Part shown: positions 4,340-59,143 of the stretch, piece by piece
How positions within the stretch are numbered: position 1 is the stretch's first letter
Layout of the letters: every line of letters begins with the position of its first letter
NCBI RefSeq assembly: GCF_002571385.2
Contig: NW_019217985.1
Span: 383,921 to 447,920, forward strand
Origin: Stylophora pistillata
Lineage: Eukaryota
Reading direction: 5' to 3'
Length of the DNA: 64,000 nucleotides
Notes under the pieces: generated by a model
Database searches by the model: none
Told to the model about the DNA's origin: nothing
The model's input: the letters and a program-made list of their open reading frames with translations, nothing else
Position numbers and translations under genes: made by a program

Positions 4340-7300
4340 TTAAACGGATAGAGAGGCTTTCCACGAATAATCATCAAACTCGCACTCTTCTAGGTCTCCA
4401 TGACTTAGCTGTCGTTTCATTTTCTTTTTATGTGGCGATTTGATTGCTAATGGCTTTTGGCAAACCCTCTGCATGATGTGAGCTTTTATAGTCGACTTCT
4501 TGCGACGTTCAAAGAAGCAATATCCGCAAGCCCACCAGAATTCACCTTCAATACTTTTGCGTCTTCTTCCTTTGCCGTGCGGGTGGATAAGTGTAGGTTT
4601 CTTTCTCACTAATTTCAACATACCAAGAGTGTCAACTTCCTCTACAACGTAGTCAATTTTTGGATTATGGCTATAATACGCGGTGACCTGAAACGAAATG
4701 AACTTAGCCATTAAGGGTATATATTTCGAAACATATTGAAATATTTTTCGCATCGCATGGAATTGCTACTGATTGGGATGAAATTGTAAAGGTAGTCTGA
4801 AATAGTTTTGTTTTTTTAAACACCACTAATTTGATGAATCGTGACTTTCACATAGGTTTTGGTTTTTTACTTTGAAATAGTTAAAAAAAAAGTGCCTAAT
4901 TATTTCCAAAAAGTTGTGATCATTTTTCTCACAAGAAAGACTATCCTTGCGAGACGAGAGCTCTGTAACTACCAGTTCTGCAACCCCATATTTCATCTCC
5001 AAATTGCAATCACTATGTCAAGATATGGTTTTCTAAAAGTGAATTTTCAAAAATAAAGTTAAAAAAAATCTCCCTATTCTTCAGTTTTACAGTTGATAAA
5101 ACAGTATTATATTTAATGATTTAAAGAGACTGAGCAATACAGGTTACTTCGCTGAGATGTTGCCAGTGTTAAATATCTGTGAAATGGAAATCACAGAGTC
5201 AGCTTATTGAAATATTTAGATACAGAAACCAAAGAAAGTGCACAGGAGTTCTACAAAAAATTTGAAGTTCATTACATCTGATAGAGGATTCGATTTTTTT
5301 AAGGTTAGAGACTCCAAGAGGAACATTAAGAGCAATAAAGAGCAAAGCTATCCAATATATTGAAGCGAAGGGTGGAAAACATGGACACAATAGTCAAACA
5401 AAAAATAATTAATGCCCTGCTTTAATATTCTAAATTTTAATCCAAACAATTTTGATTGTAGACTTACACATTAAAAAGATTATTCACTCCTATATGATCA
5501 TTAGAATCACCATTGAGAAACACAGCTTTAGGTATACATTGTGTATCAGTTCTGTTATGTGGAACTGAAATCTGGAAAAAAATTTCAGAATCAATTGAAT
5601 CTATCCAGGGGCGAGGGTAAAAGTGTCCATTCAGAACCGCAATCTTTCAGAGTAAAGTAAGAGCCCCAACCCATGCAATACTCGGTTACATTCTACTATC
5701 AATTCTCATCAACGCTGATAGAGCACTGTAATTCGTCAAATGGGAAGAGCTCCCTTAAAAAATGCCTGGATACATGTCACTAGTAGGAACCAAACTGAGA
5801 TGAGAAATAGTGGTATCTTTGATGGATGCTGCTTATACCACCATATAACTCCTATACATTTATACTCAGTAACATTTCCAGCAAACTAACTTCTGGGTTT
5901 GCAGATTATGCTTCAAAACAGGCCTTCTACAAAGCCGCAACGACAATGTTCAGTTAACATTTGACTGCTAAGGAATAATTCTACTTTCAGGGTGCCCTGT
6001 CAAGTAAACCAAAATATAGGTGAGGCAGCTCACACTTACCGCACGCGTATCTAAGGCTGTGTTGTTTCGGAGCAAGACCTTCGCAGTAGTAGTATGTCTT
6101 GATATATGGTTGGAATCCTGAGTCATAAATCTCTCAGCAAACGTGTGCTGTGTCGCAAAACCATCTTCGTCCTCTAGAGTAAATTGCACAAAATCCCGAT
6201 TCAAAGCTTCGCGATCTAGACATTCTGAGTGAAAATACATAAAACTCATTACTATTAAATCGGCTCTTATGAAGTCATTGTTACCACAGTTGGATGATTT
6301 TGAATTCTCTGCGACTTTTCCTTGACAAACGTAAAATGTCCTTAATCGACTGAACTAACAATTTTACAAACTAATCCTGATAATGGCATCCAACCATTAC
6401 TTTGTACTTTCAGAAGGTCACATATAGTGTATATAAATTGATAGTGCTCTAAGGTAACATGGTAAGAGAATTGATTCTTGGAAACCCTACATCAGCTAGT
6501 AGTTCAATTTCATTAAAAAATAACATTAATAAGGACTTTCATAGTGTAAATTGGCCACTGTAAAAAGCCCTTCGCTATGACGAATGGGGGAAAGCTCGAA
6601 AAGTCATCTTCAGAGAGTCTCTACGGTGCCAAATTTACATTATCAACCCCATTGTTAAAACCAAATTATCTCAAATGCTAAGCTGGTCAGATATCGGTCA
6701 CTGTACTTAAAAATTAGTATCATCGGCATCATAAAAAGGAAAGTGTCACCCTCTTTCATATCAAATAAATAGATATACAACTTCTTATTTACTTAAACTT
6801 CACTTTTCCCTGCTTTCTTTCAAATATGTAAACTTTCCCAGACTCGAAGTCAAATTCCCTGATTTTCCCTAAACTTAAAGAAATTCACTTTTCCCTGATC
6901 TTTTTTCTGACTTGTGGGATTCACGAAATAGGTAAATAAAAGACATAAGCACTTATAAAAGTCGTATAGAGACCGTTGATTGAGAGTTCGACGATAGCTA
7001 TACTTTGGCCCATTAAGTTGGGTCACTTTGATCAAACGGATTGAAAGGGATTACATATCGTACACCAATGTTAATACTATTATACACGTGTTTAAATTGA
7101 AAAAAAAAACCTTGATGAATTGTCAGACACTACGAAATTAGAAAAGGTAAACGTGACCTTTCAATGTTTCGCAATTGACCGGATACGAGCGGAGGTTCAA
7201 AGTTATGTAACAAATGAATTCTGATCAACATCTTTGCATAGATTAGTGCTTAACTTTCCTTTTCTTGCGAAATGTCTTATCTTTGTTTTCACCTGGAGTT

Positions 7301-9434
7301 CTTAAATAACTCATTTTTAAAATTAATCAAGCCATTCTTATACGGAAATTTCGCGACGGTGTTGAATGAATCGCTATTTCAGTTCTATTGACGACAGCCG
7401 TTACAAAATTCTACCATATTTAGTTTGACCCCATGCGATCATTTGCAGCAGTGTTTAAATTCTTAATAATAGATACTGAAGAGGTATGTATGCAGAATAA
7501 ACGAAGAGAAGAAAAGGCACTCCTAAAAGTTTAGTAAAGTGTTTATAGTACTTCAATCTGTGATGTTTATCAACTCTTGTCTGATTTCTTTTCACAATTT
7601 TTTGAAACATCTCACACAATTTTGACACTTATTTTTTAAATATTCTGACTTATCAAAAAGAAAATTCAAAACTCCTTGTAAACGCTGGTTACAAGGCATT
7701 CGACAACTAACCCTGTCTCATTCCACGATGCCTGGAATGCCTGCTTCTTGAAGACAACTCAGTTACATCGTTGATGTCAGACCACTTAAACTTTCGAATA
7801 ATCCGTTGCATGGTACCACTTTTAGGCAAACAATGACCTATGAGGGAAACCGTTACATCAAATAAAATAATGAACATCACCAGAAGCTTCCCATTACCTG
7901 GGATCGGAAGTTCCTTTTTGACTGATTTAGCTAATCCAAAAGCATACATAGCAAGAGAGCACTATTTTGACCTTACAAAGATTCTTCTTTTAAATAAAAT
8001 GGTGAAAATCTCTTAACAATTCTTCAAGAATAAAAAATAAAGCTTATTCTTGACGGCTGTAACAATCTAAAGCTCTTAGCTCGAAGTGGATAAAGTGTAA
8101 ACCGCCAACAAATGTACCTCATAAGTTAAATAATTACTAACCAACTCCATCCCTCTTCATTTTGAAGCTTGCCTTAGTTGTAACTCTGAATGGCCTTGAT
8201 TTCACCATTCCCCTCAAGCCTGACTTAAATTCCAGGGCTATCAACAGTTCCCATTTGTTTCGGTGAACGACGTCTGCCTTCTCTAGCCTATATACTGTAT
8301 CACCTTCTTGCGTTCTGTACACCGACCCAAGATCAACGGTTGCAAGGTGGTACTTTGCATCGCCTTGTGTAATATTTACTTCTAGCTCCACTGGACCTAT
8401 AGATTCAAACATTTGGCCAATAAGACGGGTGGAACAAGAACCAAATTAACTTCAACAGCGAAACATTGCATCGTCTTGCATAGTATCTACTTCAAATTTC
8501 ACTGAACCTACAGGCTCAAACAATTGCTCAATTTATCAGCGCTGGTTACCCAGTCGAGACTACAACTAAACTGTACATAAACAGTGACAATACCTATCCA
8601 TTCCGGCATTAACAGGATACAAATATCAGTGTTTTACGTATTTTGGGATGCTCGTCTTACCTGTAACATCGCGAGTCTTGATCGCAGCTTCAGCACACCT
8701 TTGAGTGTACGCCCTAAGACCTGTAATTTCATCAGATGCTCGAATCGTTAAGGACACTTTTGAGTCCTCCAAGGAATATTCTAAATGCCCCTTGTTGGTT
8801 TTCTTGGTCTTTTTGTCGTAAACATCTTTCAAATCCGTTATCTGAATTTCTGCTTCCACCTCAAAGGCTTGGCTTTCCATCTGAGTACTGGCCAGCAAGC
8901 TGGCTGGCTCTTCAAGAAATGAACCAAAATGAACAATTTCAAATATGACACGTTGCCCGAGAGAGAGTGATAAATAAGGCAATTGTCGTGTTTTTATGAC
9001 ACGTCAGCAAAGTGTTATCGACTGACTTCCTCATTTATTTTCGAAACATACGCTTGGACAAGGAATTGCGCCTAAGGATTGAGTGCTTCGGGTCAGCGTG
9101 CAAACCTAGAGGAAAAATGGCTGATAGCTAAGTAAATGACGAGAATAAAGATACCACATTTTCCAACTCGCTTAGAGTACGTTCACTAATTGCACTAACA
9201 TGCATCATCATCACAGCATAGTATACGATAGAAATTTATAAACTTATCTTTACCCGGCAAAGGTTCGAGGAGCACAGCATCAGGAGCACCAAGCGTAGAG
9301 CTCAGACTATGTACTTCTTCACCTATAAATGGTTCTGTGTCATTCAAGGGAGCAAATCCTAGTTCAGATTGAATGAACTCGTCAATATCATGTAGTCTTT
9401 CGTCTAAGAACATCTCCATATTGAGGTCGCTCAT
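4340..9434 (-). CDS. Gene A: uncharacterised putative transcription factor, ~405 aa (acidic N-terminus, putative Ig-fold DNA-binding domain, C-terminal C2HC zinc finger). Exons 9434-9254, 8909-8661, 8396-8142, 6224-6040, 4687-4340
   Basis: Five GT-AG exons with consistent phases (1,1,1,0) give an open 1218-nt CDS. It aligns exon-for-exon with gene B (DIDEFIQSELGF, LKDVYDKKTKKT, PFRVTTKAS, WWACGxCFFERRKKSTIKAH, SLSV*). Confidence 0.85.
6570..6670 (+). mobile_element. Degenerate Penelope-like element remnant with decayed minimal hammerhead motif
   Basis: TTCGCTATGACGAA...GCTCGAAAAGTCA followed by TACGGTGCCAAATTTACATTATCAAC; a related copy lies at ~50365-50520. Confidence 0.45.
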
Positions 9435-12585: not shown

Positions 12586-12620
12586 TAACCACTGTGTGAT
12601 CCACGTGATCCACGTGTGTC

Positions 12621-16480: not shown

Positions 16481-16762
16481 TATTGCAAATGAATGCTAGA
16501 CTATTCGCAATTTGGCTGGTCCATTTCACAATTTCATGTTCCAACTCGACATGGGAAACTAGACTGTTTATCATTTGGCTAAACTATTTATGTATAGGGT
16601 GTTCTGTTTCATGAAGGAAATCTAGACTGTCTATAATTTGGCCATACCATTCCTTTATATTAGCTACGCTATGCTGCAGCTGATCCTTAAACCATCTTTG
16701 TATTTACTGATCTATTTGACAGCCTTGTATTTTTGGTGGTGACGGCCGCCCATAGTTATCCT

Positions 16763-18068: not shown

Positions 18069-18081
18069 NNNNNNNNNNNNN

Positions 18082-19681: not shown

Positions 19682-22600
19682 TCAAACAGAAAGAGAGTCC
19701 GTCCATGTATAACCAAGAAAATGAGGTTCCACCAAGTCACTTTCGCTATTTTGGCGGCTTGTTAATTTTCTTTTGGACAATTTATTTTCAATCGACTTTT
19801 GACAAACCCTCTGAGTTACATGCGCTTTTATGGTTGATTTCTTGCGACGTTCGAAGAAACAGTGCCCACAGGCCCACCAGAAATCCTCTTCGGCGCTCTT
19901 GTGTCCATTTGCTTTACGGCGAGTGCTACTAGCCATACATCTCTTCCCAACCAACTTTAGAAGACCCGGATGCTCGGGTTGCTCCACAATATGGTGAATT
20001 GATGTTTTGCTATTGTAATACTTTGAAACCTAAGAAGAGGACATTAATTAATATCCTTTCCTTGGCAAACAAACACCGATGGTATTGCTTAAAAAACACA
20101 ATGCAATTGATTGGGTCAGTTGCTGATAGTAATATGTCTACCCTGAGATGAGTGGTTGGGTTCGGAGCACAAGGTAGTATTTAACAATGGCTTGATGTCG
20201 GGTGGAGAGATAGAATGAAGGCAGTACGGCTCTGTTTTAATGCCGAGCTGATCATACCATGTTTTGTCAAAAAATGTAAACGCAAGCCAAGACGTACCAG
20301 ACACAACGTTACAAAACACTTACCACGTTTCTATCTAAGACGGTGTGATCATGAAACAAAATTTTCCTGACAGCCAAGGATTCTGAACCAGGTTCGGAGT
20401 CGGTCTCAAAACTGTCAACAGAAAAGTGTTCCGATGTATTGTCTTCCTCATTTGTAAAAGAGAAGGCGTTTAATTGTCCACTCAAAGAACATGCCACTTG
20501 ATTTGAAAATTCTGTGAAAGGATACAATGGCTGTAAGTTAAAATGCCTATTTACTGATCTAATACTTTGAAAGTATTTTCAAAACAAGCCAAGAAGACAC
20601 ATTGAAGTCAATAGGGTACTCCTTCGAAAAACTTAGCGTAAATAAATCGGATCAGTTGTTAATCCAGGGGACCAATGGGTACCACTGACGCAGAGGAACA
20701 CCTTATGCTCACTGGAAGCTCATTACAAATTAAACTTCTGAATAAAAGCAAAGCTAAAAATCAAGCTAAGCAATGACGAATTTGCATAAGATTGGAGGCG
20801 CCTAAGGCCATGGGTTCCCCGAATATGCTTTTGTCCTACTCTATCTCTTCTGATACTCACGATATTTCAGTTTCGAATTAAGACTTTGACCGAAAGCCCG
20901 AACTGAAATTACTTAAAAACTCGATTGCCAATCTTTGCGTGATTCTTTTCGTTGGTTGCCTTGATTCATTCAGTGAAATAAAGAAACAGTGGAAGGGCAA
21001 CTTCTCCCATCATCAATTTTATTTTTAATAAGACCCAGAGAGTTCCAAAAAAAACCCGTGAATATCGATTATCGTTGCTGAAGGAAATCATTCCACCGTA
21101 TAATCAATCGATCAAATTTATTTCAATTTCTTACATCCCATTCGTCATTACCCATTCCTCACTTTCCATTTTTTCTTCACCCAACTCATTCCACATTGTT
21201 CAAATATAAAATGAGTAGGCACATGCGGACCAGTTCAAGTTGTTGGCGGAGACTCACTCCCTCCTTCTTACATACATGAAAACGTAGTGGCTAAAGCACC
21301 ATGCAGTGTATTAGCCATAAAAAGGTAATGCGTAACGCCTACATTTTCACACAGGGTCTCACAAAACAAAATTAGATTAATCACGAAATTCAAACAGCAG
21401 CTGCTGACACAAAGAATGCTCGCAAATCAACCTCACTTCAATTAAGACAGTTATATTCTTAAGTTTATCCCAAAGTGAAAAACACGTTATCAACGTACTG
21501 AACATATTTTCCAGCATCTATTTGGCAATATATTTGGGACGCTAAATTGTGAAACTGACCCTATCGGTTTTCTGAAGTTGGGAATCGAACCGAAACCGTC
21601 ACATGTCCTAAGAGAAAACGGATAAACATTTCTCTTCTTCTCTTTTCGCAGAGTGCTTAGAAGCAAAATAACTAAGTTATCAACAGCAAAGCCATCTTTC
21701 TTCTGTATTCTGTTACAAATGGAATATTTCAGGGGAAGGAAAGGTTCGAAAATGTTGAAGCCATTTCTGCGGTTCTCCAACGAAGTTGGAAAGCTTGCTA
21801 GCTACTGACTTAGGAAAGGATGTGCCCAAGTGTTTTTTGTTTATTTCTGTTCAATGTTTTGCTCATGCTCACAGCGTTTGTGTTTTCGTCCTTTTCCTAT
21901 TTTTATTCTTTACCTCCAGTTTTCTTGATATTTTACTTGACGTTTGTAATTTGAAACAAGAAGATAACCCTGGTGGAGACTTCAAAACGAACCGAATTAC
22001 AGAATTGAAAGAAAAAAGGAAGAAGAAAGGAGGTTTAAGAAAAATATTGTACAATAAAAATCAAGAAAAGTAACTGAAAACAATAAGGTCACCACAAGGG
22101 GACAAAATTTCTTGGAATGAATTGTGGAGCTCCTCATAGTTACTCATTATCTCTCCTTTTGCTCTCAATTCATGTAAATGACATTACATCAGCCATGAAA
22201 CGATAATTCAGCCTCAGTTCTAGATGACACCAACATATCTAATAAAAAAAATTAATCTTAAACAGTTGATTAACACTAACAACCACTTAAGTAGCTCGTC
22301 TTCATGGTTCAAGGCTAAAGGGTTGAATGATCGTTTCAGCCATGAAACGATAATTCAGACTTTATAGATGACACCAACATATTTAATAAAAAAAAATTAA
22401 CCTAAAACAGTTAATTAACACTAACAACCACTTAAGTAGCTCGTCTTCATGGTTCAAGGCTAAAGGGTTATCAAAAATAAACAAATAAAAAGGGAAAACG
22501 AAAAAAGAAGGAAATTTACTGAACGGGTAGAGCAATATAACTTTTTAGGAGCAGTGATTGATGAAAATTAAACTGGGATAGCAACAGATATACATCTGAT

Positions 22601-25263
22601 AACCTCAAATATTTCCAAGAACATTGGGGTCATGCAAAACCTTAGCTTTTTACTTGTTCACAAAAGCTATTGATAGGTTATAATTTTTTATGCCGCTTAA
22701 GTTCACAGAGAAATAAGAAAGCCCATTGCTAATGTTACAAGTTATCCCAGGCTGTGCTTCTGATCACCATTGAGAAAAAAAAGGGAGAGTTTGCAAATGT
22801 CAATACCACACTATTAGGAGCAGCCTTATAAAACCACTCTTACATTGCAATAATGAATTATGGTTCCATCTTCTATTTGCACAGTTTGAGAGATTTTCCA
22901 CGGAGACTTACATTCTGATAAAGGAAGGTGACTATCTACACATACTCAGAATTCAAACAAACACAACATTTAGCCAACCTTGTTTTATTCCATTAAAGGA
23001 CCTTTCAGGAACATCACTGCTATCGCTGGGCCGGCTGAATTTTCGAAATAACCTTTGAACATTTCCACAGCTAGGCAAATCTTCAAGAGAAATCGTTGGT
23101 TGACATTAATTATAAAAAAATAGTAGGATATGACCGATATCCTACACAAATTTAATTTATCTCCTCCAGTTCCTTTAAGCAAGTATCAGTACTCCATTTT
23201 CAACAGAAAATGTTGAGCTGATGACCAGAACGAGTCCGTGATCAACAAAGTTGCTATTTTTGACCTCACATTTGTATCATCAATCGATACGGAGCGCTAA
23301 TATTGAACTCTGAAAACACAGAGGGTTTGCAAGCTGTTGTGAAAGTAAACCACACCAAACGAAGTCAGACAAGGATAATTAGTCATACATGTGTTTGCAG
23401 CGCTCTTGTGTAGAAAAGATAACTACTAGGATTTGAAGCAGAGACCTTGAAATCATTATAGTAACACCCTGAGATTTCTTGATATTTGGTCCGCATTTTG
23501 CGTGCACATCAACAATCCTATTTCACAGACAAGAGTCAGTTGGCTGTTCATCTTCCCTGCATTCATTGATGATATAAAAATACCAACCTCCTTTCTTCCT
23601 CATCTTGTAACTTGCTTTGGTTGTAACTCTGAATGGCTCTGACTTAACTGCTTCTTTCAAGTCTGAACCAAACTCCATTTCTATTATCATTTCCCATTTG
23701 TTTCTTTCAATGACTTCGGCCTTCTCTAGCCAGTAGACTGGATCACCTCCTTGTGTCTTGTACACCGACCCCAGGTCTACTACAACGACTCGGAATCTGG
23801 CCTCACTCTGAACAACCTTTACATCTAGTTCCACTGGACCTAAAAAAGACACAAATACTGATATCTCAAAATGCCGCGTTTCTAAGTGAAGCACAGCTTG
23901 TCAAATGATGCCTTAAGAAGTTACAAAGGCACTTAAAGAATCTATGAAAAGATGCATAGAATACCAATTGTGTCGTGAGTCCTCCTCGCAGCCTCGTGAC
24001 ACCTTTGAGTGTAAGCTCGAATACTGGAGATCTCATCAGAAGCTTGGACAATCACAGTTACTTCTGAGTCGTCCAGGCGATATTCAAATCCTTCTTTAGT
24101 TTTCTTCGTCTTTTTGTCGTAGACGTCTTTGAGACCCACGATCTGAACTTCCACTTCAACTTCATAAGCCTTCTTTGGGACACTGTTTGTCTCTTGCTCT
24201 AAAAGATTTCAGTTGAGATATTTTCGACCAATGATATTTATTAACTTGTTTTTAAACTAATAACCCATTCACACCAAAGCTGAAACACGTTATAAAGCTG
24301 TTTTCTTCAACACGTTTTGTAATTTCTTTCGTTACAGAAATTCCTTAAACTTATGTTTTTATTCTTCTCGGATAAGGACGATAAACCATAGGCCTCTTCT
24401 CCTACATCTTATCTGGTTATTGGTTAGCAGGGTACGTGAAAGAACTTACGCACTTCTCGCAAAGAGTAGGACGTAGCTTCCACTGTCGCGGTCAGGCCTC
24501 ATTTCCGAAAAGTTGGGGTACATGTCAAAATCTCCTGTCAAACAAAAACTGTTAACTGCTCATCGCAGCCTAGCTACAGTTGTTGTAAGAGCATATTCCT
24601 GTGGAGATTGCACTATATAAATGCCACATCACCATGTTCGTCGACTGCGAATTTAGCCGAATAGTAAAAATACAAGTTAGTCGGTTAAATTGAGCCCTTA
24701 GTTAAATTTTTTATTTTCTTTCGCTGATCTCCAATCATTTAAGCCTAGTTTTCGTAACCACACGTTCTACTGTGTGGGTGGACTGCTCAAGTTGGAAATG
24801 GCGCTGTTTTGACTGAAATATTGATAAGTATCATGTATATTTAAGACAGAGTCTAATTAGCACAGAGTGTTGTTTGAGATCCGAATTTTAGCTTCTGACT
24901 TCTCATAAAAAGAATCGCTATAGCAAAAATCAGATAACGAAGGTAAAATCCGCTAAAATCAGGTAAAAAGAGAAACTAAAGGCGGCGGGCTTAAACGTGT
25001 AAATCGATCATTCCTTAAACCGCCTGCTGGTGACTAACAATGCCTTCGATACCCGCGCCTACAACTGTGACACCCAAGTAAAGTTTCGGCTCACCTAATA
25101 ACTCGTCCCCCGCTTCACGAAACAAGGAGCTTATGCTGTAAAGTTCTTCGACTGTAACTGACTCTGAAATATGACTCACTGGAGGGAATCCTAGTTCGGA
25201 CTGGATAAATTCGTCAATATCGCTGAGTCTATCTTCCAAGGTTGCATCGATCTTCCGATCCAT
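19682..25263 (-). CDS. Gene B: paralog of gene A, ~396 aa (acidic N-terminus, putative Ig-fold DNA-binding domain, C2HC zinc finger). Exons 25263-25095, 24198-23965, 23839-23588, 20511-20324, 20029-19682
   Basis: GT-AG exons with phases 1,1,1,0 give an open 1191-nt CDS. Intron positions match gene A and the last exon has the same 348-nt coding length. Confidence 0.85.
22188..22468. repeat. ~140-bp tandem duplication in gene B intron 3
   Basis: TCAGCCATGAAACGATAATTCAG...TTCAAGGCTAAAGGG occurs at ~22188 and ~22336. Confidence 0.85.
22520..22650 (+). mobile_element. Degenerate LINE (CR1/L2-like) reverse-transcriptase C-terminal fragment
   Basis: Translates as ERVEQYNFLGAVIDEN*...HLITSNISKNIGVM, matching the FLG..ID..L.W..HI..I..KIS..IG pattern. 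Confidence 0.55.
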
Positions 25264-48596: not shown

Positions 48597-50466
48597 CTAG
48601 TCGTTTTCCTTCAGCTCTGGTTTCGTAGGATGTGTATTACACACGATATCCCTGCCGGATTCGTATGGGGTCCATACCTCCGAATGAAAATATACAGTGG
48701 TGCAGTTGTGATCAACTGCTACTACTTCTGCACCCCGCACCATTTCTTTGTTGTCTAAATGCGACCGAACATGTCGGATTCCGCCATAAGCACATCTGTC
48801 CAGATTCAGATAATAATGTGCGTCTGTAAGAGAAAGAAAACGAGCTCATTAACAGGGGTAAGGCATGATTATTGAGTTTATGTACGTCTTGAAATCACTT
48901 AACCCCAAAAGTTTTCGATTGGTCATTTAAAATGCGTGTCAGGCTGCTCCAATCTTAACCAAGCTGGTTCCGTTGTGAGATTTATCACAGTAATTCTCTA
49001 TATAATTTACTTCCCTTTTCTTGGTTTACCTAAAATTTAGGGAACCTGTTATTATTTATCGCCTGGGCGGACAATAATTTTGGTTGTATCACAGAAGGGA
49101 ATAAAGCTCTGGATTATTCTAATTAATTCCCCCCTAAATGGCAGTCAATTTTCTATCGTACCCCTTTAATACCCTGTTAGCGACGATTAATTCCCACCTC
49201 CGCTACCCCTGAAAACCATTCCTCCATTAGTCAATTTGTAAAAATATGTGTTATGTAGAAGTCTATAGCCTCTATGACTCTAACTTTACCTGTGTAGTTT
49301 ATTCTGCCAAAGTTCAAACCCATTTTTTCCTTCAACTTGTCGAAAGTAAACTCAATACAGTGTACGCGAGGAATCTGTGTACGGAAAAAGAGGACACTAT
49401 CAATGAAGGGGTAAAAACAACACGCTACTCACTATGTTGTGCATCTTATGTGGCAGAAAAAAAAGCAATTTCAAAGGAACCCTTTTTTTTTCTTCCAACA
49501 AAACCTATTCCCGGTAGTTTGGGTAACAGGAGAAAACAAATACTGTTTAGTTCAAAACAAAGAAAATAGCGACAACTGTCGATAATCCATTGAACAAATC
49601 CTCAGTGTTATTTCTTAGCCATGGAAAGTATTTTTTTTGCGGATCAATTCCAAACCATACCCAGTACAGCTAACTCTCTATTTTTAAGTAGAGAAGGTGT
49701 GGTAATACCTGGAAGTCTGTGGTGGTAAATGTGAACCACAGCTCACTGCCTTCGATGGAGCCCTGACGACACCTGTAATAACGAAGCGCGGTGCCTGGGA
49801 CGAACAACTGGTATAACAAAACTCCTAATAACACAGCTAGAATGAAGCCTGCGAACAACCAGCGGCGAAGCCCTATAGAAACGTGCAAACATGTATTAAC
49901 GAATGAGATAAATTCACCCACTATGAAAAGAGGCGATTAATACAGTGAATTTCATTTTTGATTCTTAGCTATTATAAGAGTAAAAGAGTAGCGATAGTAA
50001 TTGTCAATTGATCTTGTGATATCAGACCTAGACTTTCACTCAACAAAACGAGCACTGTGATTGGCTGATTCTTGTTCACGTGTTTCCTGATCAAATTCAA
50101 ATGCATCCTGAATACAACAGTATGTTTTTGCCATCTGAATGTTTAAGGGAAAGTCAAAATATATAACAAAGCACCTAATGTATGGTCCCTCGGGAAACTA
50201 GTCAGTTTTATTTTCCCTCGAGTCTTGATGTTTCCCGAGATGAAGTCGAGGGAAACATCAGAACTCTCAGGAAAACAAAACTAACGGTTTCCCTCGGGAC
50301 CATACATTAAGTGTATAATGTTCACCTTTAATTAATTTCTATATTCGCCTTACCTTACCTACGTCAGAGCAAAGGGCTAACGCTAGAAACGTCAGCTTTT
50401 TAACTCTTTACGGTGGCCAATTTACAATTTCAACTTAGTTGATGTAACCAAATTACCTTGCTACCG

Positions 50467-50500
<34 letters not shown>

Positions 50501-53500
50501 TTCATCCTTTATTCATTTACCTAACGAACAGGCGTACACTTTTTAAGTTTTTCAGGCGAGCAGACGCTCAACGCGAACGCGAAGGTCGAGTCACGTGAAT
50601 GATAAGGAACGCGGGGGTCGAGTTACGCGCGAGAGAAGGAGCGCGAGGGGTGAGTTACGTTCGTGAAAGGATCGTGAAGATTCAGCAACGTGCGTTTGAG
50701 GAAGCACGAAAATCGTACCACGCATAAGAGGAGGAACTTGATGGTCGAGTCAGGAGAGGAGGTACAAGTACGATTCGGCCTTTGCACTCGCCCCAAAAAA
50801 AGCATACTAGAAGACCTCGTGTATAATGAAAAACGTCAAATGATCCAAAAAATTCAAAGATAGGCGACATAATTACCTGAAAAACATTTCTTCTTCATCT
50901 TATTCACTTCAGTTTTGACATCTTCTCTGACGTGCTTCCGCAAGTCGTCGCTCGCAGCCTCGGCCATGTGACTGGATGTAATACTTAGGAGAATCGAAAC
51001 GAACGACTGTACCAAATTAACATCGTTTTCTTCAGCGTCCCGTCTTTCTAGTGTTTGGCCGAGTAGAAAGGCATCACTGGCCATGCGACCGTTCAAACGG
51101 CTCTGAGGTATAGCAACTCCTGAGTGTTCCAATGAGGCAAAAATTCGCTCGCCGTTTTTCACTGGACCCAGTACTTTGACGTTCACCATGCCAATCACAC
51201 ACACGAGATCGTCTAAACCTGACACAGAACAGCCAGAAAACTCACTTAAACTTGTTAAAAAAATATTCATAAGTTTGGACAAATTACAGTAAGATCTCCA
51301 TTCGGGGAGAAGACCTCGAGATTTGAATAAAAAGAACCCAGCATTCGTTCTTATGAGTCTTTCAGTACAACTTTGGACAAATCACAGTAAGATCTCTATT
51401 CAGGGAACAACAAACTCAGGAGTAGAAAAAGAGTCCCTCCGATAGGGCGCTGCTGTCCCTTTGATAAAAGAGACACACTGATTACAAGCGCATTTTTTCA
51501 GTTGTGACCAAAGTTTGCATACTTTATATTGAGGTGCTCCTATGTAAGAGAAAAGGGGAAAAAGACCTCCAAATACGAAAGGAAACCTTGGTTATAGGGT
51601 TGACGAGTAACAATAAACTGATAACCTTCTCTCACTGTTACCTTTTTCTTCGCCATCTGCTGGTGTCCTGGCCTCTAAATACGCGGATCTACTGATCACT
51701 CCCGCCATCTTAGCTTTAGACGCATTAAATTGGGTCAACTTCTCTATGTGGGTGTTGCCACTGGAACTTTCAAAGAACCCAATGATATCACCCTCTTCGA
51801 GAGGAAGGTCGAGTTCGGTTTTGTTCAGTTTGAAATGATAAGCAATGTCTCCTTTCTGTGTAAGAATAGGCTTCTTAACTCGCAGTTCATTAATTAGGGC
51901 AGATTGAGCGTCGAGGCGGTTTGTAATTATCTCTGCGGCATTGATACCTGGAAATAAGAGAGCAATTCATAAACCAAATAATACGTTGTTAACAGACAAA
52001 AAACTGGGCTCTTCAAATCGTCTGGGTCATCTCCCGAGGCATGAGGGATCAGTGCCAGGCCGATAACACGAACCAAGTCCTTGCTCTGCTGCAAAACTCG
52101 AATCAAACTGTTTCACTCATCTGCAAAACGGCTTGTTTTCTATAAGTAACACGTTTTAACTGGAAGTAGTAGAACTTTTGTCTGTGAGTATGACACGACC
52201 GAAACAGGAAAAAGAAGAGGATCGAGCGATCTGTACATGTTGCACAGGTGACACTTTACTGGTGACTTGTGATTAAGTCAAGAAAGATGCCAGGCGTGTC
52301 TTAGTTGATGCTCCGTCAGGTCCACTAAGTAACAGGAAAAGTCCTAGTTAAGGCAGTGACTTACAATCGCTGTTCATGCCACTGCTCCAACTTCCACTGG
52401 GACTGGTATCCAATGCCAACACTACAAGAAGAGAGAAAGAAATGAGCTGACAACAAACAAAATACGACTGCTTTTGTCAGCGGTTACACGCCAGACAAGA
52501 GAGATTTTCCCCAACAATCAACGTGAAAACAGAAAGATTTAGAACCACGTATACTGCAGATGCGGACGGCAAACACTAAACTCTGATTCTGCTTACTTTT
52601 CTTCCAATACTCAACTAAATTAACAGTAAAGTAGAAGAATTACAAAGCAAACAGAAAAGTTCAACTCTCCTGAGTTGACGCTCGCGTAATCATGGTTCAA
52701 AATTTCTTTCTTGTTATCGCTCATGAACAGAGATGTCAGTTAAAATTTACAGCGACAACTGTAATACATCGACGTGTCGAATGAAATACGTGAAGCATCC
52801 TCTGGTCCACAGTTAAAACTATTGGGTGAAATATAATTTGAGTGACTTTTCTTCCCACAAGGAGCAAGCATCTTCAAATTGCTCAATCGCAGTGTCTGAA
52901 ATGGGAGAAAATTTACCTACCTGAGATTAGCCTTTTCCGGGCGAAATAGAAAGAAGAGGTTATAATTTTGAGTGGGGTCGCGTACAAACGAAACCTCTCT
53001 CCTTTGCACAACCCGACCCAAGCCTCTCTCGGCCGCGATCGCTCCGTTTACAACAGTTTTTTCGTTCCATTTTACTAACTGAACGCCCAGAACAGGCTAC
53101 CCCGTGATTAAAACGTCCACAACTTACTTTTTCGCTTTTTTCTGTTATTTTCCGGACTTGGTGTTCCACAATATCCATTATCCACGCTTACCAAATCCTC
53201 TTCTGTGAAATGCAGCAGACAAAAAAGACTCAGATCATTGCTGTATGTATCACCACAAGAGTGTGGTACAAGAGCAAGGGAAACATTCTTCGGGTTCAAT
53301 GCGGCGATTCTGAATTTTCTAGTTATCATATTTAGCGTTTACAATCTTCATCTTCATTCACCAAATGAAACTAGGAAATTTGAAGAGGCCGAGAAGGGTC
53401 TGGACAACCTTGCTCAACAAAATTTGGTTCCCGATTATCTGAGAAATTTTCATGGATGTACTGAGGGCTCTTCGCAGTTTGCAATCTTAATCTACAGGGA

Positions 53501-56500
53501 CGCGGCGCCCCTCTCCCAATACAATAACCTGGCCAGGTTATCGTATAGTGCCCTTGTGCAAAACACTTTACTCTCTCCAGTGCCTCTCTCCAGGAGTATA
53601 ACTGGGCAACGACGAATTGTCAAGGAAGCCTGATGGAATGCTGAGAGGTAACCTCACGATGAACTAGCATCCCATCCAGGGGGGAGGGGGGGTAGTATTT
53701 CTCTTAGCTGCTTCATGCTGTGGAAACTAGAATAAGCTCTGGCTGAGTGACCAAGCCACTTGGCTCACGTAGAGACTTTGCTTCTTACCCACAAGGTCAT
53801 CGTGAGTACGAGTGCTGTGAACATTGTGCTATATGAATTATTCCCCGTCCAGTTTACCTGATTCCTGTTTCGCGTTTTTTCTGCTTTGCACTTGGAAGCT
53901 TTTACTGATGAATTCCTTCGTCGTTCCATCCGCAAAATGAAGCACAACAATCACGCGGAAGATGTTTCTTTCCTCTCCTTTAACGCGTGAAAGTTCATAT
54001 ACTTTAATGCCATTGTTACTATAAACTGAATCGAGGTTGACGGCAAAATTCGCCACAAACAAATCCTTTTTACTGTACACCAAGTTCAAAGAAACTCGCC
54101 CATTCATGTCCTGAAGAATTCTGGCAGCCTCTGGACATCTTTCCACGTATGCACGCACATCCTGGGAAAAACGTAACAAGACGACATTAGGAGACAGAAG
54201 CGACGTACATTACGAATACAGTCGACTCCCGAGAACTCATATCCTCTCTAACTCAAACCAAAATCGATTTCTCTTACACCTTCCCCCTCAGGGGGCGGGT
54301 GAGGGGAGGGTGCACCTCCTAGTAAGAGGCTAGTAGGAATGTGCCGCTGAATAGGGTCGCATATTGCACGACTGGGTCAACTATGTTGGAGTTTCGTCTA
54401 GATTGGGGTCGTACATTTTCGGGATTTTTTTAGGTAAGAAAATTCTGGTAAAGCTTTAACTAAGGTAGATGCTTAAACAGAAAGTGACTAAATTGGAATC
54501 GCGAAAATTACATTTACCCCAAAGTGACTGAGATAGGGTCTATAGTTGGCCACAATAGACTAGTGGTTCTGAGAGGCCAGCAGCACATACACAGCAAAAA
54601 TTGACCAAAGTAGCCCCCTTCCACCTAGGACCATTCCGTTCATGCGAAAATCACATTACGATTCATAATAAAATATGACAGCTGTGCATAATGTTAAATA
54701 AATTAGTAATGTTCTTAATCTTTTTCGCAAAGGGTCCTTGAATAGAGACCATATTTTAAAATGAAGTTTTAACTTAAACTTAACTTAACTTAACTTAACT
54801 TAACTAAACATAATCAACCACTACCCACAAATAGCATAGCTAGTCGCGGCGGGCAGTGTGTGGACGCTAAAACATCTTACATAAATTTCGGTTCAACAAA
54901 AGATTCAATAAATATACAAGAAACAGAAATTAAATATTAAATCATTAATTTAAAAGCAGAAATGACAGTATGAGATAAAAATACAGAAATAGAAACACAT
55001 GACAATAAATAGAAGAATACATAAGTTATAGGCTACTATTAACTGGATTTAACTTTTGACACATCATTGATTATCCGTTCTACGTCAACATAACTATCTT
55101 GAACTTGAAGATTTTGAAATAATAATGTTGTTAGCTGTTCATTCGAGGCTGAAAAGAAGCGAAGCCCGATCTCAAGAGGAAAAAGTTAATTTATTCAATT
55201 AGTTGATTCCTTCAAGTTTGTCTTCATTTAGGATAAACGCGAATTAAAAAAATCTAATTACCTGAATTGGTTTTTGTGAAGTTGCCATGAGGTGTACCTC
55301 TGCATCCAAGAGCCTTTGTTCTGAGTTTGCATTTCGTCGCATCTGTCCTTTCTCGTAGACATCTTTCAAATCCAGAATGGTCACATTAGCCTTCGTATCT
55401 TCCGTATAGGTCACGTCGAATGAAGGAAACACTAATAAAAGTGAAAATCAAAGTCAAAGACTTATTCAAAGAGAATTGCCTCTCGCATAAAGCAAGCATT
55501 AACCTTTAAGTCACCTGAGTGACCAAGATAGAATTTCTCAATCCAATATCAATACAATATCAATCAGACAAGAGAATAAAGAAAAATATCCATCAGGCTC
55601 CGGTTGTTCAAAGGGCGGATAACGCTATCCAACGGATAAATCGCTATCCAGCGGATAAGTGTTACCAAAACGTACTGCACTAACCACTGGATAGAGATTA
55701 ATCCAGTGTATAGCGTTATCCATCCTTCCAGCGGATAAGTGTTACCAAAACATACTGCGCTATCCACCGGATAGAGATTTATCCAGTGTATAGCGTTATC
55801 CATTCTTTGAACAACCGGGCCCAGCAGATTATTAGTTGATTCAGTGCCAAATTCTCTAAACTCACACTATTAAAACTGTTCGGCACACAGTAAGGAGAGT
55901 TACAAATGAGATCTTAGTGGGGAATGCGTTAAAAGCTAATTTCCCGCTTACTAAATGGAGGTATCTCTGACAAGTCCGTTCACGCAATCGAATTAGCACT
56001 GACTTTGGGTGAACTAGCGATATGAAATAAAACGTGGTTACGTTTCTGGGAACTTTTAGGGTCAAAAACGATATTTGTGAAAGGAGCAAATTAAAACCAA
56101 TTTCACGCTTAGGTCTAAGACTTGCTTTTTGGACGCAAGGCGCGATCCTTCTTACTGTGTAACTTGAATTAAAACTCACAGATGAAAAACTAAATATAAC
56201 TTGATCTATGCTTTAATATGTAAGGATACTTTAGAGCTAGATTATTCCTTTATTTTACCTAACCAGCTATCTAGGTGGGGGCCACACGTTTCAATTTTCC
56301 AGGTGGGACGAAGGGGAGATCAGTCGTCGCTAAGAGCCTCATAGAATAAAGGGGGACTATAGAAAATTGAATGGCAAGGAGAGGGGAACTTAGGGAAGAT
56401 CAGGTAAATATTCTTGGGACAAAAATTAAGTCCTCCGACCTCCCCCACCCCCCCTTCCCACCCAACACCCCCTTCCCCTTCACCCATGCAATAAATAATG

Positions 56501-59143
56501 ACCTCCTCGACCAAAATAATTGTTATCGAAAAGAGAAAGACCAGAGAGAAGATTTACATCACGTGGGCCGTACGGTTTTTTGATACGATTATTCATCTTC
56601 CGCCATAAAACGTGACAGCAACAAATCTGACTAAACGAAAAAATGCGCACGTGCATAACCTCCTCGTCTCCTACCGACTAAAGTGGCATTTTAATAAAGA
56701 ATTTTGCTACTAGGGCTCCACAGTTCTCTGTGCATTTCACACATAAAATGCACTGAAATTTGACGCATGTAGCCAGTTGCATCGCTCGCGATAAAGTTTC
56801 AAAGAGCGCAGTTGTACTCTCTAGATATAGGTGAAGATTTTGAGCAAATGTGAGGCGTTTCACTTGGACAAAAAAAATTGAAATCGCTGTTCAGAATTTA
56901 GCAGTCGACGCAGGAGGATGCACGGCAGGTTAAAACGTGACTTGTGCCATTCTTTTTTACAAGTACATGTGTGCATGTGCACGTTGCATCTTTATCCTTA
57001 GTAAAATTCAATCTTATAATCACAATGAACACTTGACAGCGCATATTTACGATCAACACCGACTTATTGTGGCAGAGCGTCAGTAATTGCGCACAGGTAC
57101 ACCAAATCCTGCTTTACCATTGTAAAAGAGGTGCAACTGCTTGTAGGATAGAGAGTAAAGATTTAAGTGAAGAAAATGAACCCACGACTTTGCTTCTATC
57201 ACCCATCATCCGAGACGTGCTTCATGAAGAACGTGACAAAAGAACAAACTAGAAAAGGAGTTTTTACTCCAATTTACAATTCTATAACTTAGACGGTTTT
57301 GCAATTGACTCGCTGAAGTTTATTTATTCGCTACGGATTTTAATTTCTCTACACTATGTAAAGATATTTTCATTACACACCCCAAAAACCTGAATATCAT
57401 TCAATAAATATTTCACAACTTTTCCTAAGGATATATCAGGCAATACAGGGACTAGAACCCCACTAAGGGACTCTATTGTCTGACTTAGATACGCTTTACG
57501 CTCGTCAAATTTCGAACAGCTATGTAGCTTTGAGTGGGTTTTACTGTTGTCTTTTTTTTTTTTTTTTTTACAGACCTAACCAATAATCGCTGAGATTTTT
57601 CTAGTCATTAGGTCATGTCACAAAATCGCCCAAAATTGCGTGACGCAGTTCATGCATGTATGAAAACGTGACGAGAATTTCAAATGAATTCACCTAGCAC
57701 AATCGCGCGCTGATTACATGCAAGATGATTGATTCGAGTTTGGCCATTAAAAAGAAGGGAAAAAGTTAAAAATAAAATTCGTTTACTCTTAATCCTCAGG
57801 CATGACTTGACGAACTAGTTTTCATCGAGAATTTTAGGAACTATGAAACCTACGCACGCGTGGAACGTGACCTTGCCATACTGACATTTTTAACGTCTGA
57901 CACGTTCAAAACCTCTTATTACAGCGAGTGCACGTTCAAACTTATCTAATGCACTCTTTTCACAATTAACTCTTCGTTTCATCGGTTCAGCAAGATAAGT
58001 TTGTTAAGTCTGTTAAAACGGCCAACATGCAAGAAACTTTAATTTAAAGATTCAACGCATTGTCGGAAATTACATGTCAAATTAAGAAGTCAAATTTTAA
58101 CAAAATGCAACTAGTGCTTTTAACTATTAGTTGTATTTTATTATTATTTAGCCTGTTCAGCAGTTTAAAACTACTAAAAGCATAGTAATCAAGAAGACGA
58201 TACGATCAGTAAGGGTTTTGTGTAATGCGCGACATTTATTTCCTTGCGCAAATTTCGCTTGTTGAGTGATATCCTTTGTAAATAATATAAGGCCTTTAAA
58301 TTCGTTCCAATATCAATCCCAGACAAAAGCTTAACCAGAACAATAATATATACAACCTCAAAAGACAACAATGTGCACTACCATGCAAATGGCAACCTTG
58401 AAGGCTAGCCAAGGTCAACACTGAAGTATTATCGATCGAGAGTAAAAATTATCGACAGAAATTTACTGCATTTTGCTAACTGAGCCATTGTCAGCTAACG
58501 TTGATATAAATGAAATCAATTTACATAAAAGGTAGGGTTGTAATCACCTGTCAAAAGCTAAAAATCTGACGAAGGCAGGCCGCGCGTGCAAACAAAATGA
58601 CTTTTCATTCTTGAGTTAGTTGAACAGGGAGTTATAATTGAACTTGCATAATCTATGGTAACGAATAAATATATCGTTAAAGTATTACGTTCGAAAATTT
58701 AGGCAGGTCTCAAGTCAGTTACTTGGAACAAAAACTCAGTCATCGTTGGGAGTCTGTGACAGTCAATTACTGGCAGAGAAATACAACATTTGAAACTTCA
58801 CAGACCGTATTATAACTTAATGGAAAACGATGAAAGTACAGTATATCATTCACCATTTTCCCAATCATATCATGACTACATTACGGACGCACTGTGCGAT
58901 AGACTAACAGTTAAGCAATTAAAAATACTATTGAGCGCTGCATGAATTTTTTTCATAATTATTTTACCTATCCTTTGTACGTTTATTTCATGTCATAAGT
59001 ATCCTACCTGTGATTGGCTTACCTGGATCACAACTCTGAAGAAAAGCTGGGTTGAAATACAAACTGGTGTCTTCCAGAATTTCATCCAAAGTGATCGGCT
59101 GTCCGTCGATATTTAGTACATGGTCATTGCAAGGGTCGCTCAT
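48597..59143 (-). CDS. Gene D: intact putative membrane-tethered transcription factor, ~616 aa (acidic N-terminus, putative Ig-fold DNA-binding domain, NLS RKKRK, beta-helix-like stalk, Peptidase_G2-like chaperone, coiled coil, TM, luminal domain). Exons 59143-59023, 55431-55262, 54161-53858, 53202-53128, 52421-52365, 51947-51642, 51218-50877, 49872-49709, 49374-49290, 48823-48597
   Basis: Ten phase-consistent GT-AG exons give an open 1851-nt CDS. It is homologous to gene C over its length and to genes A/B in the N-terminal domain. TM segment WLFAGFILAVLLGVLLYQLFV. Confidence 0.85.
50020..50320 (-). mobile_element. Hairpin-plus-tail non-autonomous element in a gene D intron
   Basis: Inverted arms ~50172-50313 around CCCGAGATGAAGTCGAGGG; tail contains GTGATTGGCT. 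Confidence 0.65.
50365..50520 (+). mobile_element. Penelope-like element remnant with decayed hammerhead motif
   Basis: AAGGGCTAACGCTAGAAACGTCAGC...TACGGTGGCCAATTTACA...CACCGACGCAGCACCACAGTTTCTTTAGAAAC; related to 6570-6670. Confidence 0.55.
53550..53770 (+). mobile_element. Diverged 5'-truncated SINE related to the 15008 family
   Basis: CACTTTACTCTC...CAGTGCCTCTC...GCATCCCATCCAGGGGG...GCTTCATGCT...GAAAC...TAAGC. Confidence 0.7.
54771..54806. repeat. (AACTT)n microsatellite
   Basis: About 7 units. Confidence 0.85.
55597..55821. mobile_element. Harbinger-type MITE nested in an older TTAA-flanked element (~55499-55933)
   Basis: TIRs GCTCCGGTTGTTCAAAG / CTTTGAACAACCGGGCC, CAG TSD, internal ATCCA..GGATA repeats. 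Confidence 0.8.

What the first reader, a model, noticed from the sequence alone, without database searches (positions are those of the whole stretch)
4340..59143. Four-gene cluster sharing one unnamed putative DNA-binding domain in two architectures (soluble zinc-finger vs membrane-anchored)
Seen: A, B, C and D share LKD[VI]Y[DE]K, E[YQ][RS][LI], QR/ER-[CT]-x-EAA, [DN]LxS[VA]Y, VYxL, and a terminal strand SRPFRVTTK / SEPFRVTTK / WKGFRIRTK / SKSFQVQSR followed by basic residues. In all four the domain ends at a phase-1 intron, after which A/B and C/D diverge completely. B and C are head-to-head; C and D are tail-to-tail. Established: Ig-fold (p53/Ndt80/Velvet/STAT-like) DNA-binding domains often end in an S-x-P-[FI]-x-V strand leading into a basic DNA-contacting tail. 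Inference: a new Ig-fold transcription-factor family diversified by exon shuffling, in which soluble A/B may act at the same DNA sites as the released C/D fragments.
Basis: partly seen in the sequence, partly recalled or inferred. Interest (0 to 1): 0.85.

Follow-up and report, generated by a model that had tools for sequence, protein, structure and literature searches.

The report
Cnidarian Ig-like domain gene family
Four neighbouring coral genes share a previously unnamed Ig-like domain. Two carry it on a membrane-anchored protein built like the transcription factor MYRF, with a phage tail-fibre module, and two on a soluble zinc-finger protein, so they look like a new cnidarian family of probable gene regulators, though DNA binding is unproven.

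Summary
Genes A, B, C and D (Stylophora pistillata; all "uncharacterized") share a ~145-residue module with every quoted motif. In all four it ends at a phase-1 intron, and the stated orientations are right. Neither assembly gap touches coding sequence.

- **Fold:** AlphaFold2 gives a confident all-beta Ig-like sandwich (pLDDT >90).
- **Sequence novelty:** there is no Pfam or PDB sequence match.
- **C/D architecture:** the domain is followed by a KRKR-type basic stretch, a module with the fold of the phage phi29 gp12 auto-chaperone, a coiled coil, one TM helix and a Cys-rich tail. That layout mirrors MYRF. The module is predicted to trimerise (0.92 against control 0.00).
- **A/B architecture:** these end in an invariant C-x2-C-x12-H-x5-C finger.
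- **Origin of A/B:** a domain tree puts A/B as one coral-only clade nested beside the C lineage, which fits exon shuffling.
- **Range:** the family is found across Cnidaria. This genome has 15 copies of the exon, 14 of them on this contig.
- **DNA binding:** untested and only circumstantial.

The scan already noted the MYRF-like reading and an in-frame TAA in gene C on this window. No laid run reads the assembly's T at that position, so the stop is unsupported.

The parts
8661..8880 (-). Gene A (LOC111332757, P0148), domain exon 1. It ends in phase 1.
   Evidence: spliced exons translate to P0148 with 0 mismatches
8142..8396 (-). Gene A, domain exon 2 (...SRPFRVTTK...). It ends in a phase-1 intron.
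9254..9434 (-). Probable unannotated first exon of gene A, carrying the acidic motif ERLHDIDEFIQSELGF. The 3' boundary is uncertain.
   Evidence: 46% identity to B residues 2-57; in-frame GT/AG joins exist. No RNA check was made.
4343..4687 (-). Gene A last exon, with the C2HC finger (WWACGYCFFERRKKSTIKAHIMQRVC) and C-terminal ...SLSV.
25095..25263 (-). Gene B (AWC38_SpisGene11837, P0002) exon 1, with the acidic motif EDRLSDIDEFIQSELGF. It ends in phase 1.
23965..24198 (-). Gene B, domain exon 1. It ends in phase 1.
   Evidence: 0 mismatches to P0002
23588..23839 (-). Gene B, domain exon 2 (...SEPFRVTTK...). It ends in a phase-1 intron.
19685..20029 (-). Gene B last exon, with the C2HC finger and ...SLSV terminus.
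30037..30091 (+). Gene C (P0003; partial NCBI model SpisGene11838) exon 1. It ends in phase 1.
30741..31004 (+). Gene C, domain exon 1. It ends in phase 1.
31529..31777 (+). Gene C, domain exon 2 (...WKGFRIRTK...). It ends in a phase-1 intron.
37998..39439 (+). Gene C exons 7-8 (37998-38288 and 39092-39439): the stalk plus the phi29 gp12-like auto-chaperone module. The assembly's TAA at 39301-39303 is not seen in any run laid.
39965..41920 (+). Gene C exons 9-11 (39965-40128, 40564-40660, 41730-41920): coiled coil, TM helix and Cys-rich C-terminal domain.
   Evidence: the spliced RNA contig joins all of them
59023..59143 (-). Gene D (LOC111332759, P0183) exon 1. It ends in phase 1.
55262..55431 (-). 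Gene D, domain exon 1. It ends in phase 0, at an intron position different from A/B/C.
53858..54161 (-). Gene D, domain exon 2 (...SKSFQVQSR...). It ends in a phase-1 intron.
48600..53202 (-). Gene D exons 4-10: basic linker, stalk plus gp12-like module (51947-51642 and 51218-50877), TM exon (49872-49709) and Cys-rich tail.

Best explanation
What is shown:
- A, B, C and D are paralogues in a family whose named members are all cnidarian. Their common ~145-residue module is a new Ig-like beta-sandwich domain, encoded as a cassette bounded by phase-1 introns.
- The older architecture is that of C and D, seen in anthozoans, a scyphozoan and a hydrozoan. From the N-terminus it runs: acidic N-terminus, Ig-like domain, basic KRKR-type stretch, a stalk plus a module with the fold of the phage phi29 gp12 C-terminal auto-chaperone, coiled coil, one TM helix, and a Cys-rich tail with a conserved N-x-T.
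- The gp12-like module is predicted to form a homotrimer.
- A/B-type genes, found only in stony corals, form one clade beside the C lineage. They keep the acidic motif and the Ig-like domain, but continue after the phase-1 intron into unrelated exons that end in an invariant C2HC zinc finger.

What is inferred:
- C and D are type-II membrane proteins that trimerise. By analogy with MYRF, they would release an N-terminal fragment that enters the nucleus, where the Ig-like domain binds DNA or chromatin partners.
- A and B would be constitutively soluble nuclear versions of the same effector domain.
For: - **Paralogy and gene models:**
  - Phage preneck-appendage and tail-fibre models in BFVD match at E down to 7e-8.
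  - 12 of 32 members give a sub-threshold PF22758 hit.
- **Trimer:** a homotrimer of C 236-425 scores ipSAE 0.92 against a best control of 0.00. Contacts agree in >=93% and pLDDT is >=86.
- **Cytosolic/nuclear N-terminal side:**
  - Conserved KRKR-like stretch after the domain.
  - Basic residues before the TM helix.
  - Conserved Cys and N-x-T after the TM helix.
- **Transactivation-like motif:** an acidic amphipathic N-terminal motif (L-x-D-I-D-E-F-I) is shared by A/B and the C lineage.
- **Zinc finger:** C335-x2-C338-x12-H351-x5-C357 is invariant in 30 of 30 A/B proteins and is predicted beta-beta-alpha.
- **Tree:** A/B is one clade (SH-aLRT 100), joined with the C lineage (96).
- **Expression:** RNA contigs and raw reads splice C exons 7-11 as modelled.
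- **Language-model neighbours:** for both the B and C domains these are Ig-fold DNA-binding families (COE1_DBD 0.87 and 0.85, LAG1-DNAbind, SPT23_MGA2_DBD). These are leads only.
Against: - No DNA-binding evidence of any kind was obtainable here.
- Structural matches are a flat list of generic Ig-like domains. p53-family rows are weak and absent from the VIA top 50.
- Atlas scores are below 0.9, and the tool itself says the best-named family is probably wrong.
- The domain is not uniformly basic. Mean net charge is about 0 in A/B (gene B -6, pI 5.1) and +3.4 in C/D.
- Self-cleavage is unproven.
  - Residues 267-271 are D-I-A-Y-H at the point that aligns with the first residue (692) of the cleaved gp12 fragment.
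I could not verify the gp12 catalytic residues.
- Large tandem clusters also fit fast-evolving immune or sensor families.
Confidence: 0.55

Rival explanations
1. The shared Ig-like domain is a protein- or ligand-binding module, not a DNA binder. C and D would be trimeric membrane-anchored sensors or scaffolds, possibly with a stress or immune role given the tandem expansion. Any DNA contact in A and B would come from the C2HC finger.
For: - Fold matches are generic Ig-like or E-set domains, most of which bind proteins or carbohydrates.
- There is no sequence or profile link to any DNA-binding family.
- The domain is acidic in the gene B lineage.
- 14 copies sit in 240 kb, a pattern common in fast-evolving response genes.
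Against: - A conserved NLS-like stretch lies directly after the domain.
- There is an acidic N-terminal motif, and the layout matches MYRF point for point.
- Basic residues are conserved within an otherwise variable domain.
- Atlas neighbours are all Ig-fold DNA binders.
Confidence: 0.3
2. C and D are domesticated viral or phage fibre-like proteins that display the Ig-like domain as a trimeric head on a surface, for adhesion or virus interference. The domain would then be extracellular.
For: The stalk plus chaperone module is of phage tail-fibre type and is predicted to be trimeric. Phage fibres often carry Ig-like domains.
Against: - There is no N-terminal signal peptide.
- Basic residues precede the TM helix, while conserved Cys and N-x-T sequons follow it, so the Ig-like side should be cytosolic.
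- About 65 residues of low-confidence linker carrying KRKR separate the domain from the stalk.
- The soluble A/B forms lack any secretion signal.
Confidence: 0.08
3. The genes are decaying duplicates or annotation artefacts with no function.
For: The assembly shows TAA in gene C at 39301-39303. Some other copies on the contig carry stops.
Against: - No run laid shows the T (DNA A, RNA G).
- C is transcribed and spliced.
- A, B and D are open and match database proteins exactly.
- Orthologues are conserved across corals, anemones, a jellyfish and a hydroid.
Confidence: 0.02

Closest known systems
MYRF / MrfA (myelin regulatory factor family)
   Same: - Order of parts: N-terminal activation-like region, Ig-fold domain, NLS, phage-derived trimerising stalk plus chaperone module, TM helix, luminal tail.
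- MYRF is described as a type-II ER membrane protein that trimerises, cleaves itself and sends the N-terminal trimer to the nucleus (PMC3742443, PMC8326128, PMC6117317).
   Different: - There is no NDT80/PhoG domain, no Peptidase_S74 ICA and no MRF_C2 domain by Pfam.
- The chaperone-like module has the phi29 gp12 fold, not the endosialidase-type fold.
- MYRF's Ser-Lys dyad has no evident counterpart.
- Cleavage and DNA binding are untested.
Phage phi29 gp12 C-terminal auto-chaperone (PDB 3gqh; MEROPS G2 / Pfam Peptidase_G2) and phage cement proteins (PF22758)
   Same: - Invariant D267 aligns with residue 692, the first residue after the gp12 cleavage point. Mature gp12* ends at 691 (PMC6542822).
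- The module is predicted to be a trimer.
   Different: - It sits in an animal membrane protein.
- It has no Pfam Peptidase_G2 match.
- The local motif is D-I-A-Y-H, and its catalytic competence is unknown.
p53-like / Rel / IPT-TIG Ig-fold DNA-binding domains (p53, NDT80, CSL/LAG1, COE/EBF, SPT23/MGA2)
   Same: - It is an intracellular beta-sandwich next to an NLS.
- There are weak Foldseek rows to the p53, p63 and p73 cores.
- Atlas feature neighbours are COE1_DBD, LAG1-DNAbind and SPT23_MGA2_DBD.
- From my own knowledge, SPT23/MGA2 are also membrane-tethered.
   Different: - There is no sequence or profile match.
- There is no zinc site as in p53 or COE.
- It is no closer structurally than to ICAM, filamin, SoxZ or glycosidase Ig-like domains.
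Classical C2H2-type zinc fingers (C2HC variants)
   Same: A/B carry C-x2-C-x12-H-x5-C, with a predicted beta-hairpin plus helix and a basic R-R-K-K-S-T stretch.
   Different: - It is a single finger.
- The last ligand is Cys.
- There is no Pfam zinc-finger hit.

Membership tests
p53-like / Ndt80 / Rel-type Ig-fold DNA-binding domains | Ig-like beta-sandwich fold | tested here: met
   [not shown]
p53-like / Ndt80 / Rel-type Ig-fold DNA-binding domains | Sequence or profile match to a member family (P53, NDT80_PhoG, RHD, LAG1, COE1_DBD...) | tested here: not met
   No Pfam family was found for the exons or for full-length homologues. No PDB sequence hit appeared up to E=10.
p53-like / Ndt80 / Rel-type Ig-fold DNA-binding domains | Structural likeness that stands above generic Ig domains | tested here: not met
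   [not shown]
p53-like / Ndt80 / Rel-type Ig-fold DNA-binding domains | Sequence-specific DNA binding | not testable with these tools
   This needs PBM, SELEX, DAP-seq or a protein-DNA structure prediction.
MYRF family | NDT80/PhoG DNA-binding domain | tested here: not met
   No PF05224 hit in any of the family members scanned: 10 and all 32 rows of A3.
MYRF family | Peptidase_S74 (endosialidase-type) ICA domain with a Ser-Lys dyad | tested here: not met
   No Pfam hit. The best structural match is the gp12 C-terminal fragment and phage cement proteins instead.
MYRF family | Single TM helix after the chaperone module, with a type-II layout | tested here: met
   The alignment shows a basic stretch, then a hydrophobic segment, then conserved Cys and N-x-T. 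AF2 gives a long helix at 423-477. The topology itself is inferred.
MYRF family | Homotrimerisation through the stalk plus chaperone module | tested here: met
   Prediction only: ipSAE 0.92 against a best control of 0.00.
Peptidase_G2 / phi29 gp12 auto-chaperone | Fold of the gp12 C-terminal fragment | tested here: met
   [not shown]
Peptidase_G2 / phi29 gp12 auto-chaperone | Pfam PF11962 profile match | tested here: not met
   Not among the families hit by any of the 32 members at E<=1. PF22758 Phage_cement was hit by 12 of 32, below its cut-off.
Peptidase_G2 / phi29 gp12 auto-chaperone | Catalytic residues at the cleavage point, and actual self-cleavage | tested here: inconclusive
   D267 is invariant and I268, A269, Y270 and H271 are invariant or nearly so. 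The VIA alignment starts at D267 against gp12 residue 692. I could not read the gp12 catalytic residues from a held paper.
Classical zinc finger (C2HC variant) in A/B | C-x2-C-x12-H-x3-5-[HC] ligand spacing with a beta-beta-alpha structure | tested here: met
   C335, C338, H351 and C357 are each present in 30 of 30 sequences. AF2 gives strands 331-335 and 338-342 and a helix at 345-353.
Classical zinc finger (C2HC variant) in A/B | Pfam zinc-finger profile match | tested here: not met
   No family was found for the last exons (E<=1) or for full-length proteins (E<=0.1).

The most novel reading that the evidence does not exclude
Cnidarians would have built a second MYRF-like system independently.
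- It is a membrane-tethered, self-trimerising and possibly self-cleaving transcription factor.
- It was assembled from a different phage tail-fibre chaperone (gp12 type rather than endosialidase type).
- It uses a previously unknown Ig-fold DNA-binding domain.

Stony corals would then have freed that domain from the membrane by exon shuffling onto a zinc finger. That gives soluble paralogues that share or compete for the same sites as the released fragments.
Probability: 0.35. Interest if true: 0.85.

Novelty: new variant of a known kind. Interest (0 to 1): 0.66.

Why it matters
MYRF was long treated as a one-off case in which an animal transcription factor uses a phage tail-spike chaperone to trimerise and free itself from the ER.

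This family has the same layout built from different parts. It is conserved across Cnidaria and amplified to about 14 copies in a reef coral. That would show that capturing phage fibre modules for membrane-to-nucleus signalling happened more than once.

It would also add a new DNA-binding domain family to the animal repertoire. The soluble zinc-finger offshoot is a clean, datable example of exon shuffling at symmetric phase-1 introns.

All members are currently annotated as uncharacterized, so naming the domain would improve the annotation of every cnidarian genome. If the domain does not bind DNA, it is still a lineage-specific Ig-like family with an unusual phage-derived partner.

Tried and rejected
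- **Pfam on the exons.** Scans of all eight domain exons and eight flanking exons found nothing credible.
- **Pfam on full-length homologues.** The only recurring hit was sub-threshold Phage_cement in the middle module.
- **PDB sequence searches.** Profiles of both family alignments gave nothing. A3 searched to E=1 returned one spurious ribosomal row, and A2 searched to E=10 returned no rows.
- **p53, Ndt80 or Rel kinship.** Rejected as unsupported. Foldseek rows are weak and VIA does not rank them.
- **COE/EBF kinship from the Atlas.** Scores are 0.85-0.87 with 160-170 shared features, and the tool flags the family as probably wrong, so I kept it as a lead only.
- **Net charge as a proxy for DNA binding.** Inconclusive: C/D are mildly basic and A/B are neutral to acidic.
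- **Non-cnidarian homologues.** None with a name was found. Two divergent metatranscriptome proteins, P0082 and P0100, have no organism on record.
- **Literature by gene identifiers and by concept.** I found no paper on this family.
- **The phi29 gp12 structure paper.** It is not held, so I could not check the catalytic residues.
- **The in-frame TAA of gene C as a real truncation.** Rejected. DNA runs read A and RNA runs read G at 39301.
- **Joined spliced sequences.** No typed or joined spliced sequence was sent to any search tool.
  - Searches used exon references or database protein ids.
  - Exons were joined only inside scripts, to check them against those database proteins or, to test candidate exon joins for gene A.

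Full report
**Source and gene models**

The window is contig C202:383921-447920 of a Stylophora pistillata assembly.

I fixed the gene models by laying database proteins on the window and refining GT..AG junctions.

| Gene | Database protein | Length | Strand | Fit to window exons |
|---|---|---|---|---|
| A | P0148 (LOC111332757) | 377 aa | - | exact |
| B | P0002 (AWC38_SpisGene11837) | 396 aa | - | exact |
| C | P0003 (transcript-derived) | 604 aa | + | 4 substitutions |
| D | P0183 (LOC111332759) | 616 aa | - | exact |

The NCBI model of C, P0168, is partial.

Searches used exon references or these protein ids. Exons were joined only inside scripts to check the models.

**Gaps**

- The 13-N gap at 18069-18081 lies in an intergenic tandem repeat between A and B.
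- The 991-N gap at 35838-36828 lies in intron 6 of C. Residues 240 and 241 of P0003 join across it with a phase-1 GT..AG junction, so no coding sequence is missing.

- The exon-2 alignment has ten invariant columns among the four genes.
- Cross-paralogue tblastn E-values run from 1e-7 to 1e-16.
- The domain ends in a phase-1 intron in all four genes.
- It is also preceded by a phase-1 intron in B, C and D, so it is a symmetric 1-1 cassette.
- A, B and C share an internal phase-1 intron (...DT[IV]|G|PVEL). D instead has a phase-0 intron 27 codons earlier.
- Nearly every downstream exon of C and D is also 1-1.
- B and C are divergent, and C and D are convergent, as stated.

**The cluster is larger than four genes**

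- A profile of exon 2 finds 15 matches in this genome. Fourteen lie on this contig between 199 and 438 kb.
- The zinc-finger exon has 4 copies.
- The chaperone-module exon has 5 copies, some carrying stops.

**What the domain is**

- Sequence searches find no known family.
  - No Pfam family matches the exons or full-length homologues.
  - No PDB chain matches either family profile, even at E=10.
- AlphaFold2, with family alignments, gives an all-beta domain with pLDDT >90 in both B (residues 70-212) and C (44-180).
  - ICAM and SYG-2
  - filamin and SoxZ
  - glycosidase C-terminal domains
  - alpha-2-macroglobulin MG domains
- Foldseek lists many p53, p63 and p73 cores, but only at E ~1e-3 with TM 0.12-0.27. 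None reaches the VIA top 50.

A specific tie to p53, Ndt80, Velvet or STAT is not supported.

The protein-language-model Atlas returns the same named neighbours for the B and C domains: COE1_DBD, LAG1-DNAbind and SPT23_MGA2_DBD. All scores are below 0.9, so these are leads and not evidence.

**Context in C and D**

The family alignment shows these parts after the domain:

1. A basic KRKR-type stretch.
2. A conserved DHLEAQRA...GDIAYH...EGDVIGF...AGVISRSAY...VCVIGxVxVKVxGxVxxGERIY module.
3. A long helix.
4. A hydrophobic segment preceded by basic residues.
5. A tail with conserved Cys and a nearly invariant N-x-T.

For the conserved module:

- In BFVD, 41 viral models match at E<=1e-3. Phage tail-fibre and preneck-appendage proteins lead the list.
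- Mature gp12* ends at residue 691 (PMC6542822). The invariant D267 therefore aligns with the first residue of the released phage chaperone.
- Three copies of C 236-425 are predicted to form a homotrimer. ipSAE is 0.92 against a best control of 0.00, the runs share >=93% of contacts, and pLDDT is >=86. In the tool's calibration, the mark was reached by 21 of 30 solved homo-pairs and by 0 of 23 single chains. The tool warns that eukaryotic passes may come from memory.

This is MYRF's layout point for point (PMC3742443, PMC8326128), but with a different Ig-fold domain and a different phage chaperone family.

**Context in A and B**

- An N-terminal acidic amphipathic motif (L-E-x-x-L-x-D-I-D-E-F-I-x-S-E-L-G) is conserved in A/B. 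A related motif (L-x-D-L-D-E-I-L) is present in the C lineage.
- Gene A probably has an unannotated first exon carrying this motif.
- After the phase-1 intron, A/B continue into unrelated exons. These end in W-W-A-C-G-x-C-F-F-E-R-R-K-K-S-T-x-K-A-H-x-x-Q-x-V-C.
- In that stretch C335, C338, H351 and C357 are invariant in 30 of 30 sequences. The predicted structure is beta-beta-alpha. This is a single C2HC finger with classical spacing.

**Evolution**

- All named homologues are cnidarian.
  - C/D-type: stony corals, sea anemones, Rhopilema and Hydractinia.
  - A/B-type: stony corals only.
- I built a domain tree of 49 sequences and rooted it on the medusozoan rows.
  - A/B form one clade (SH-aLRT 100).
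  - That clade is joined with the C lineage (96).
  - D, LOC111332743 and other lineages pair with Nematostella orthologues.
- The membrane form is therefore ancestral. The soluble form arose once from a C-like gene, which fits exon shuffling at the phase-1 boundary.

**Expression and the TAA in gene C**

I laid reads on 37998-41920.

- Spliced RNA joints appear at 38286>39090, 39437>39963, 40128>40564 and 40659>41729. They are seen in a 2182-nt RNA contig and in raw reads, with strandedness that fits a + strand gene.
- At 39301 the assembly has T, which creates TAA at codon 408. Two DNA runs read A (Lys) and two RNA runs read G (Glu). None reads T.
- Gene C is therefore intact and membrane-anchored.

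**Assessment**

Shown:
- paralogy
- Ig-like fold
- family novelty at the sequence level
- two architectures that diverge at a phase-1 intron
- a phage gp12-like module predicted to be trimeric
- a range limited to Cnidaria among named homologues
- expression of C

Inferred:
- type-II topology
- self-cleavage
- nuclear import
- DNA binding by the Ig-like domain

Evidence against a DNA-binding role:
- the structural matches are generic
- the domain has neutral to acidic net charge in A/B (gene B -6)

I put the MYRF-like transcription-factor reading at about 0.55. A non-DNA-binding Ig-like interaction module gets about 0.3.

Noticed in passing
window 39301-39303: The assembly's in-frame TAA in gene C (codon 408) is not supported by any run laid. 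DNA runs X1 and X3 read AAA, and RNA runs X14 and X23 read GAA. The partial NCBI model SpisGene11838 skips 39092-39327, probably because of this base.
   Followed up: yes
G000 contig C202:199191-377048 (upstream of the window) and C179:288992-289138: Eleven further copies of the domain's second exon, ten on the same contig and one on C179. They include a near-duplicate pair at 291806 and 298610, a copy with a TAG, another A/B-type gene (LOC111332745, domain at 374346, finger at 376776) and more C/D-type genes. The family is a tandem array of about 240 kb.
   Followed up: partly
window 9254-9434 (-): Probable unannotated first exon of gene A (MSDLNMEMFLDERLHDIDEFIQSELGF...), homologous to exon 1 of gene B. 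The NCBI model of A starts at an internal Met.
   Followed up: partly
window 4343-4360 and 19685-19702 (-): A/B-type proteins end in a conserved W-x-x-S-L-S-V-COOH (S395 in 26 of 30, V396 in 24 of 30). This could be a PDZ-type C-terminal ligand.
   Followed up: no
window 38653-39045 and 40618-41141: Intronic stretches of gene C with word depths in the thousands to hundreds of thousands in DNA runs, against about 30-170 beside them. They also show many strand-switch joints, so they are high-copy interspersed repeats.
   Followed up: no
window 14080-14559 (+): An ORF with ...FGFIDGTVRPICRP...YNGHKRVHGLKYQSV..., which looks like a Harbinger/PIF-type DDE transposase fragment between genes A and B. 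This is from memory and was not scanned.
   Followed up: no
window 16700-18100 and 43400-46000: Long tandem repeats, open in several frames (GNTWEYMGIH... and KVTLRYTLPKRVEKRL...). The first abuts the 13-N gap. The second holds the single Ns at 44268 and, nearby, 42592, and shows strong AT skew.
   Followed up: no
   Followed up: no
genes C and D, whole length: Almost all internal exons of C and D are symmetric phase 1-1: 7 of C's 9 internal exons (2-8) and 4 of D's 8 (4-7). This is an unusually modular gene structure.
   Followed up: partly
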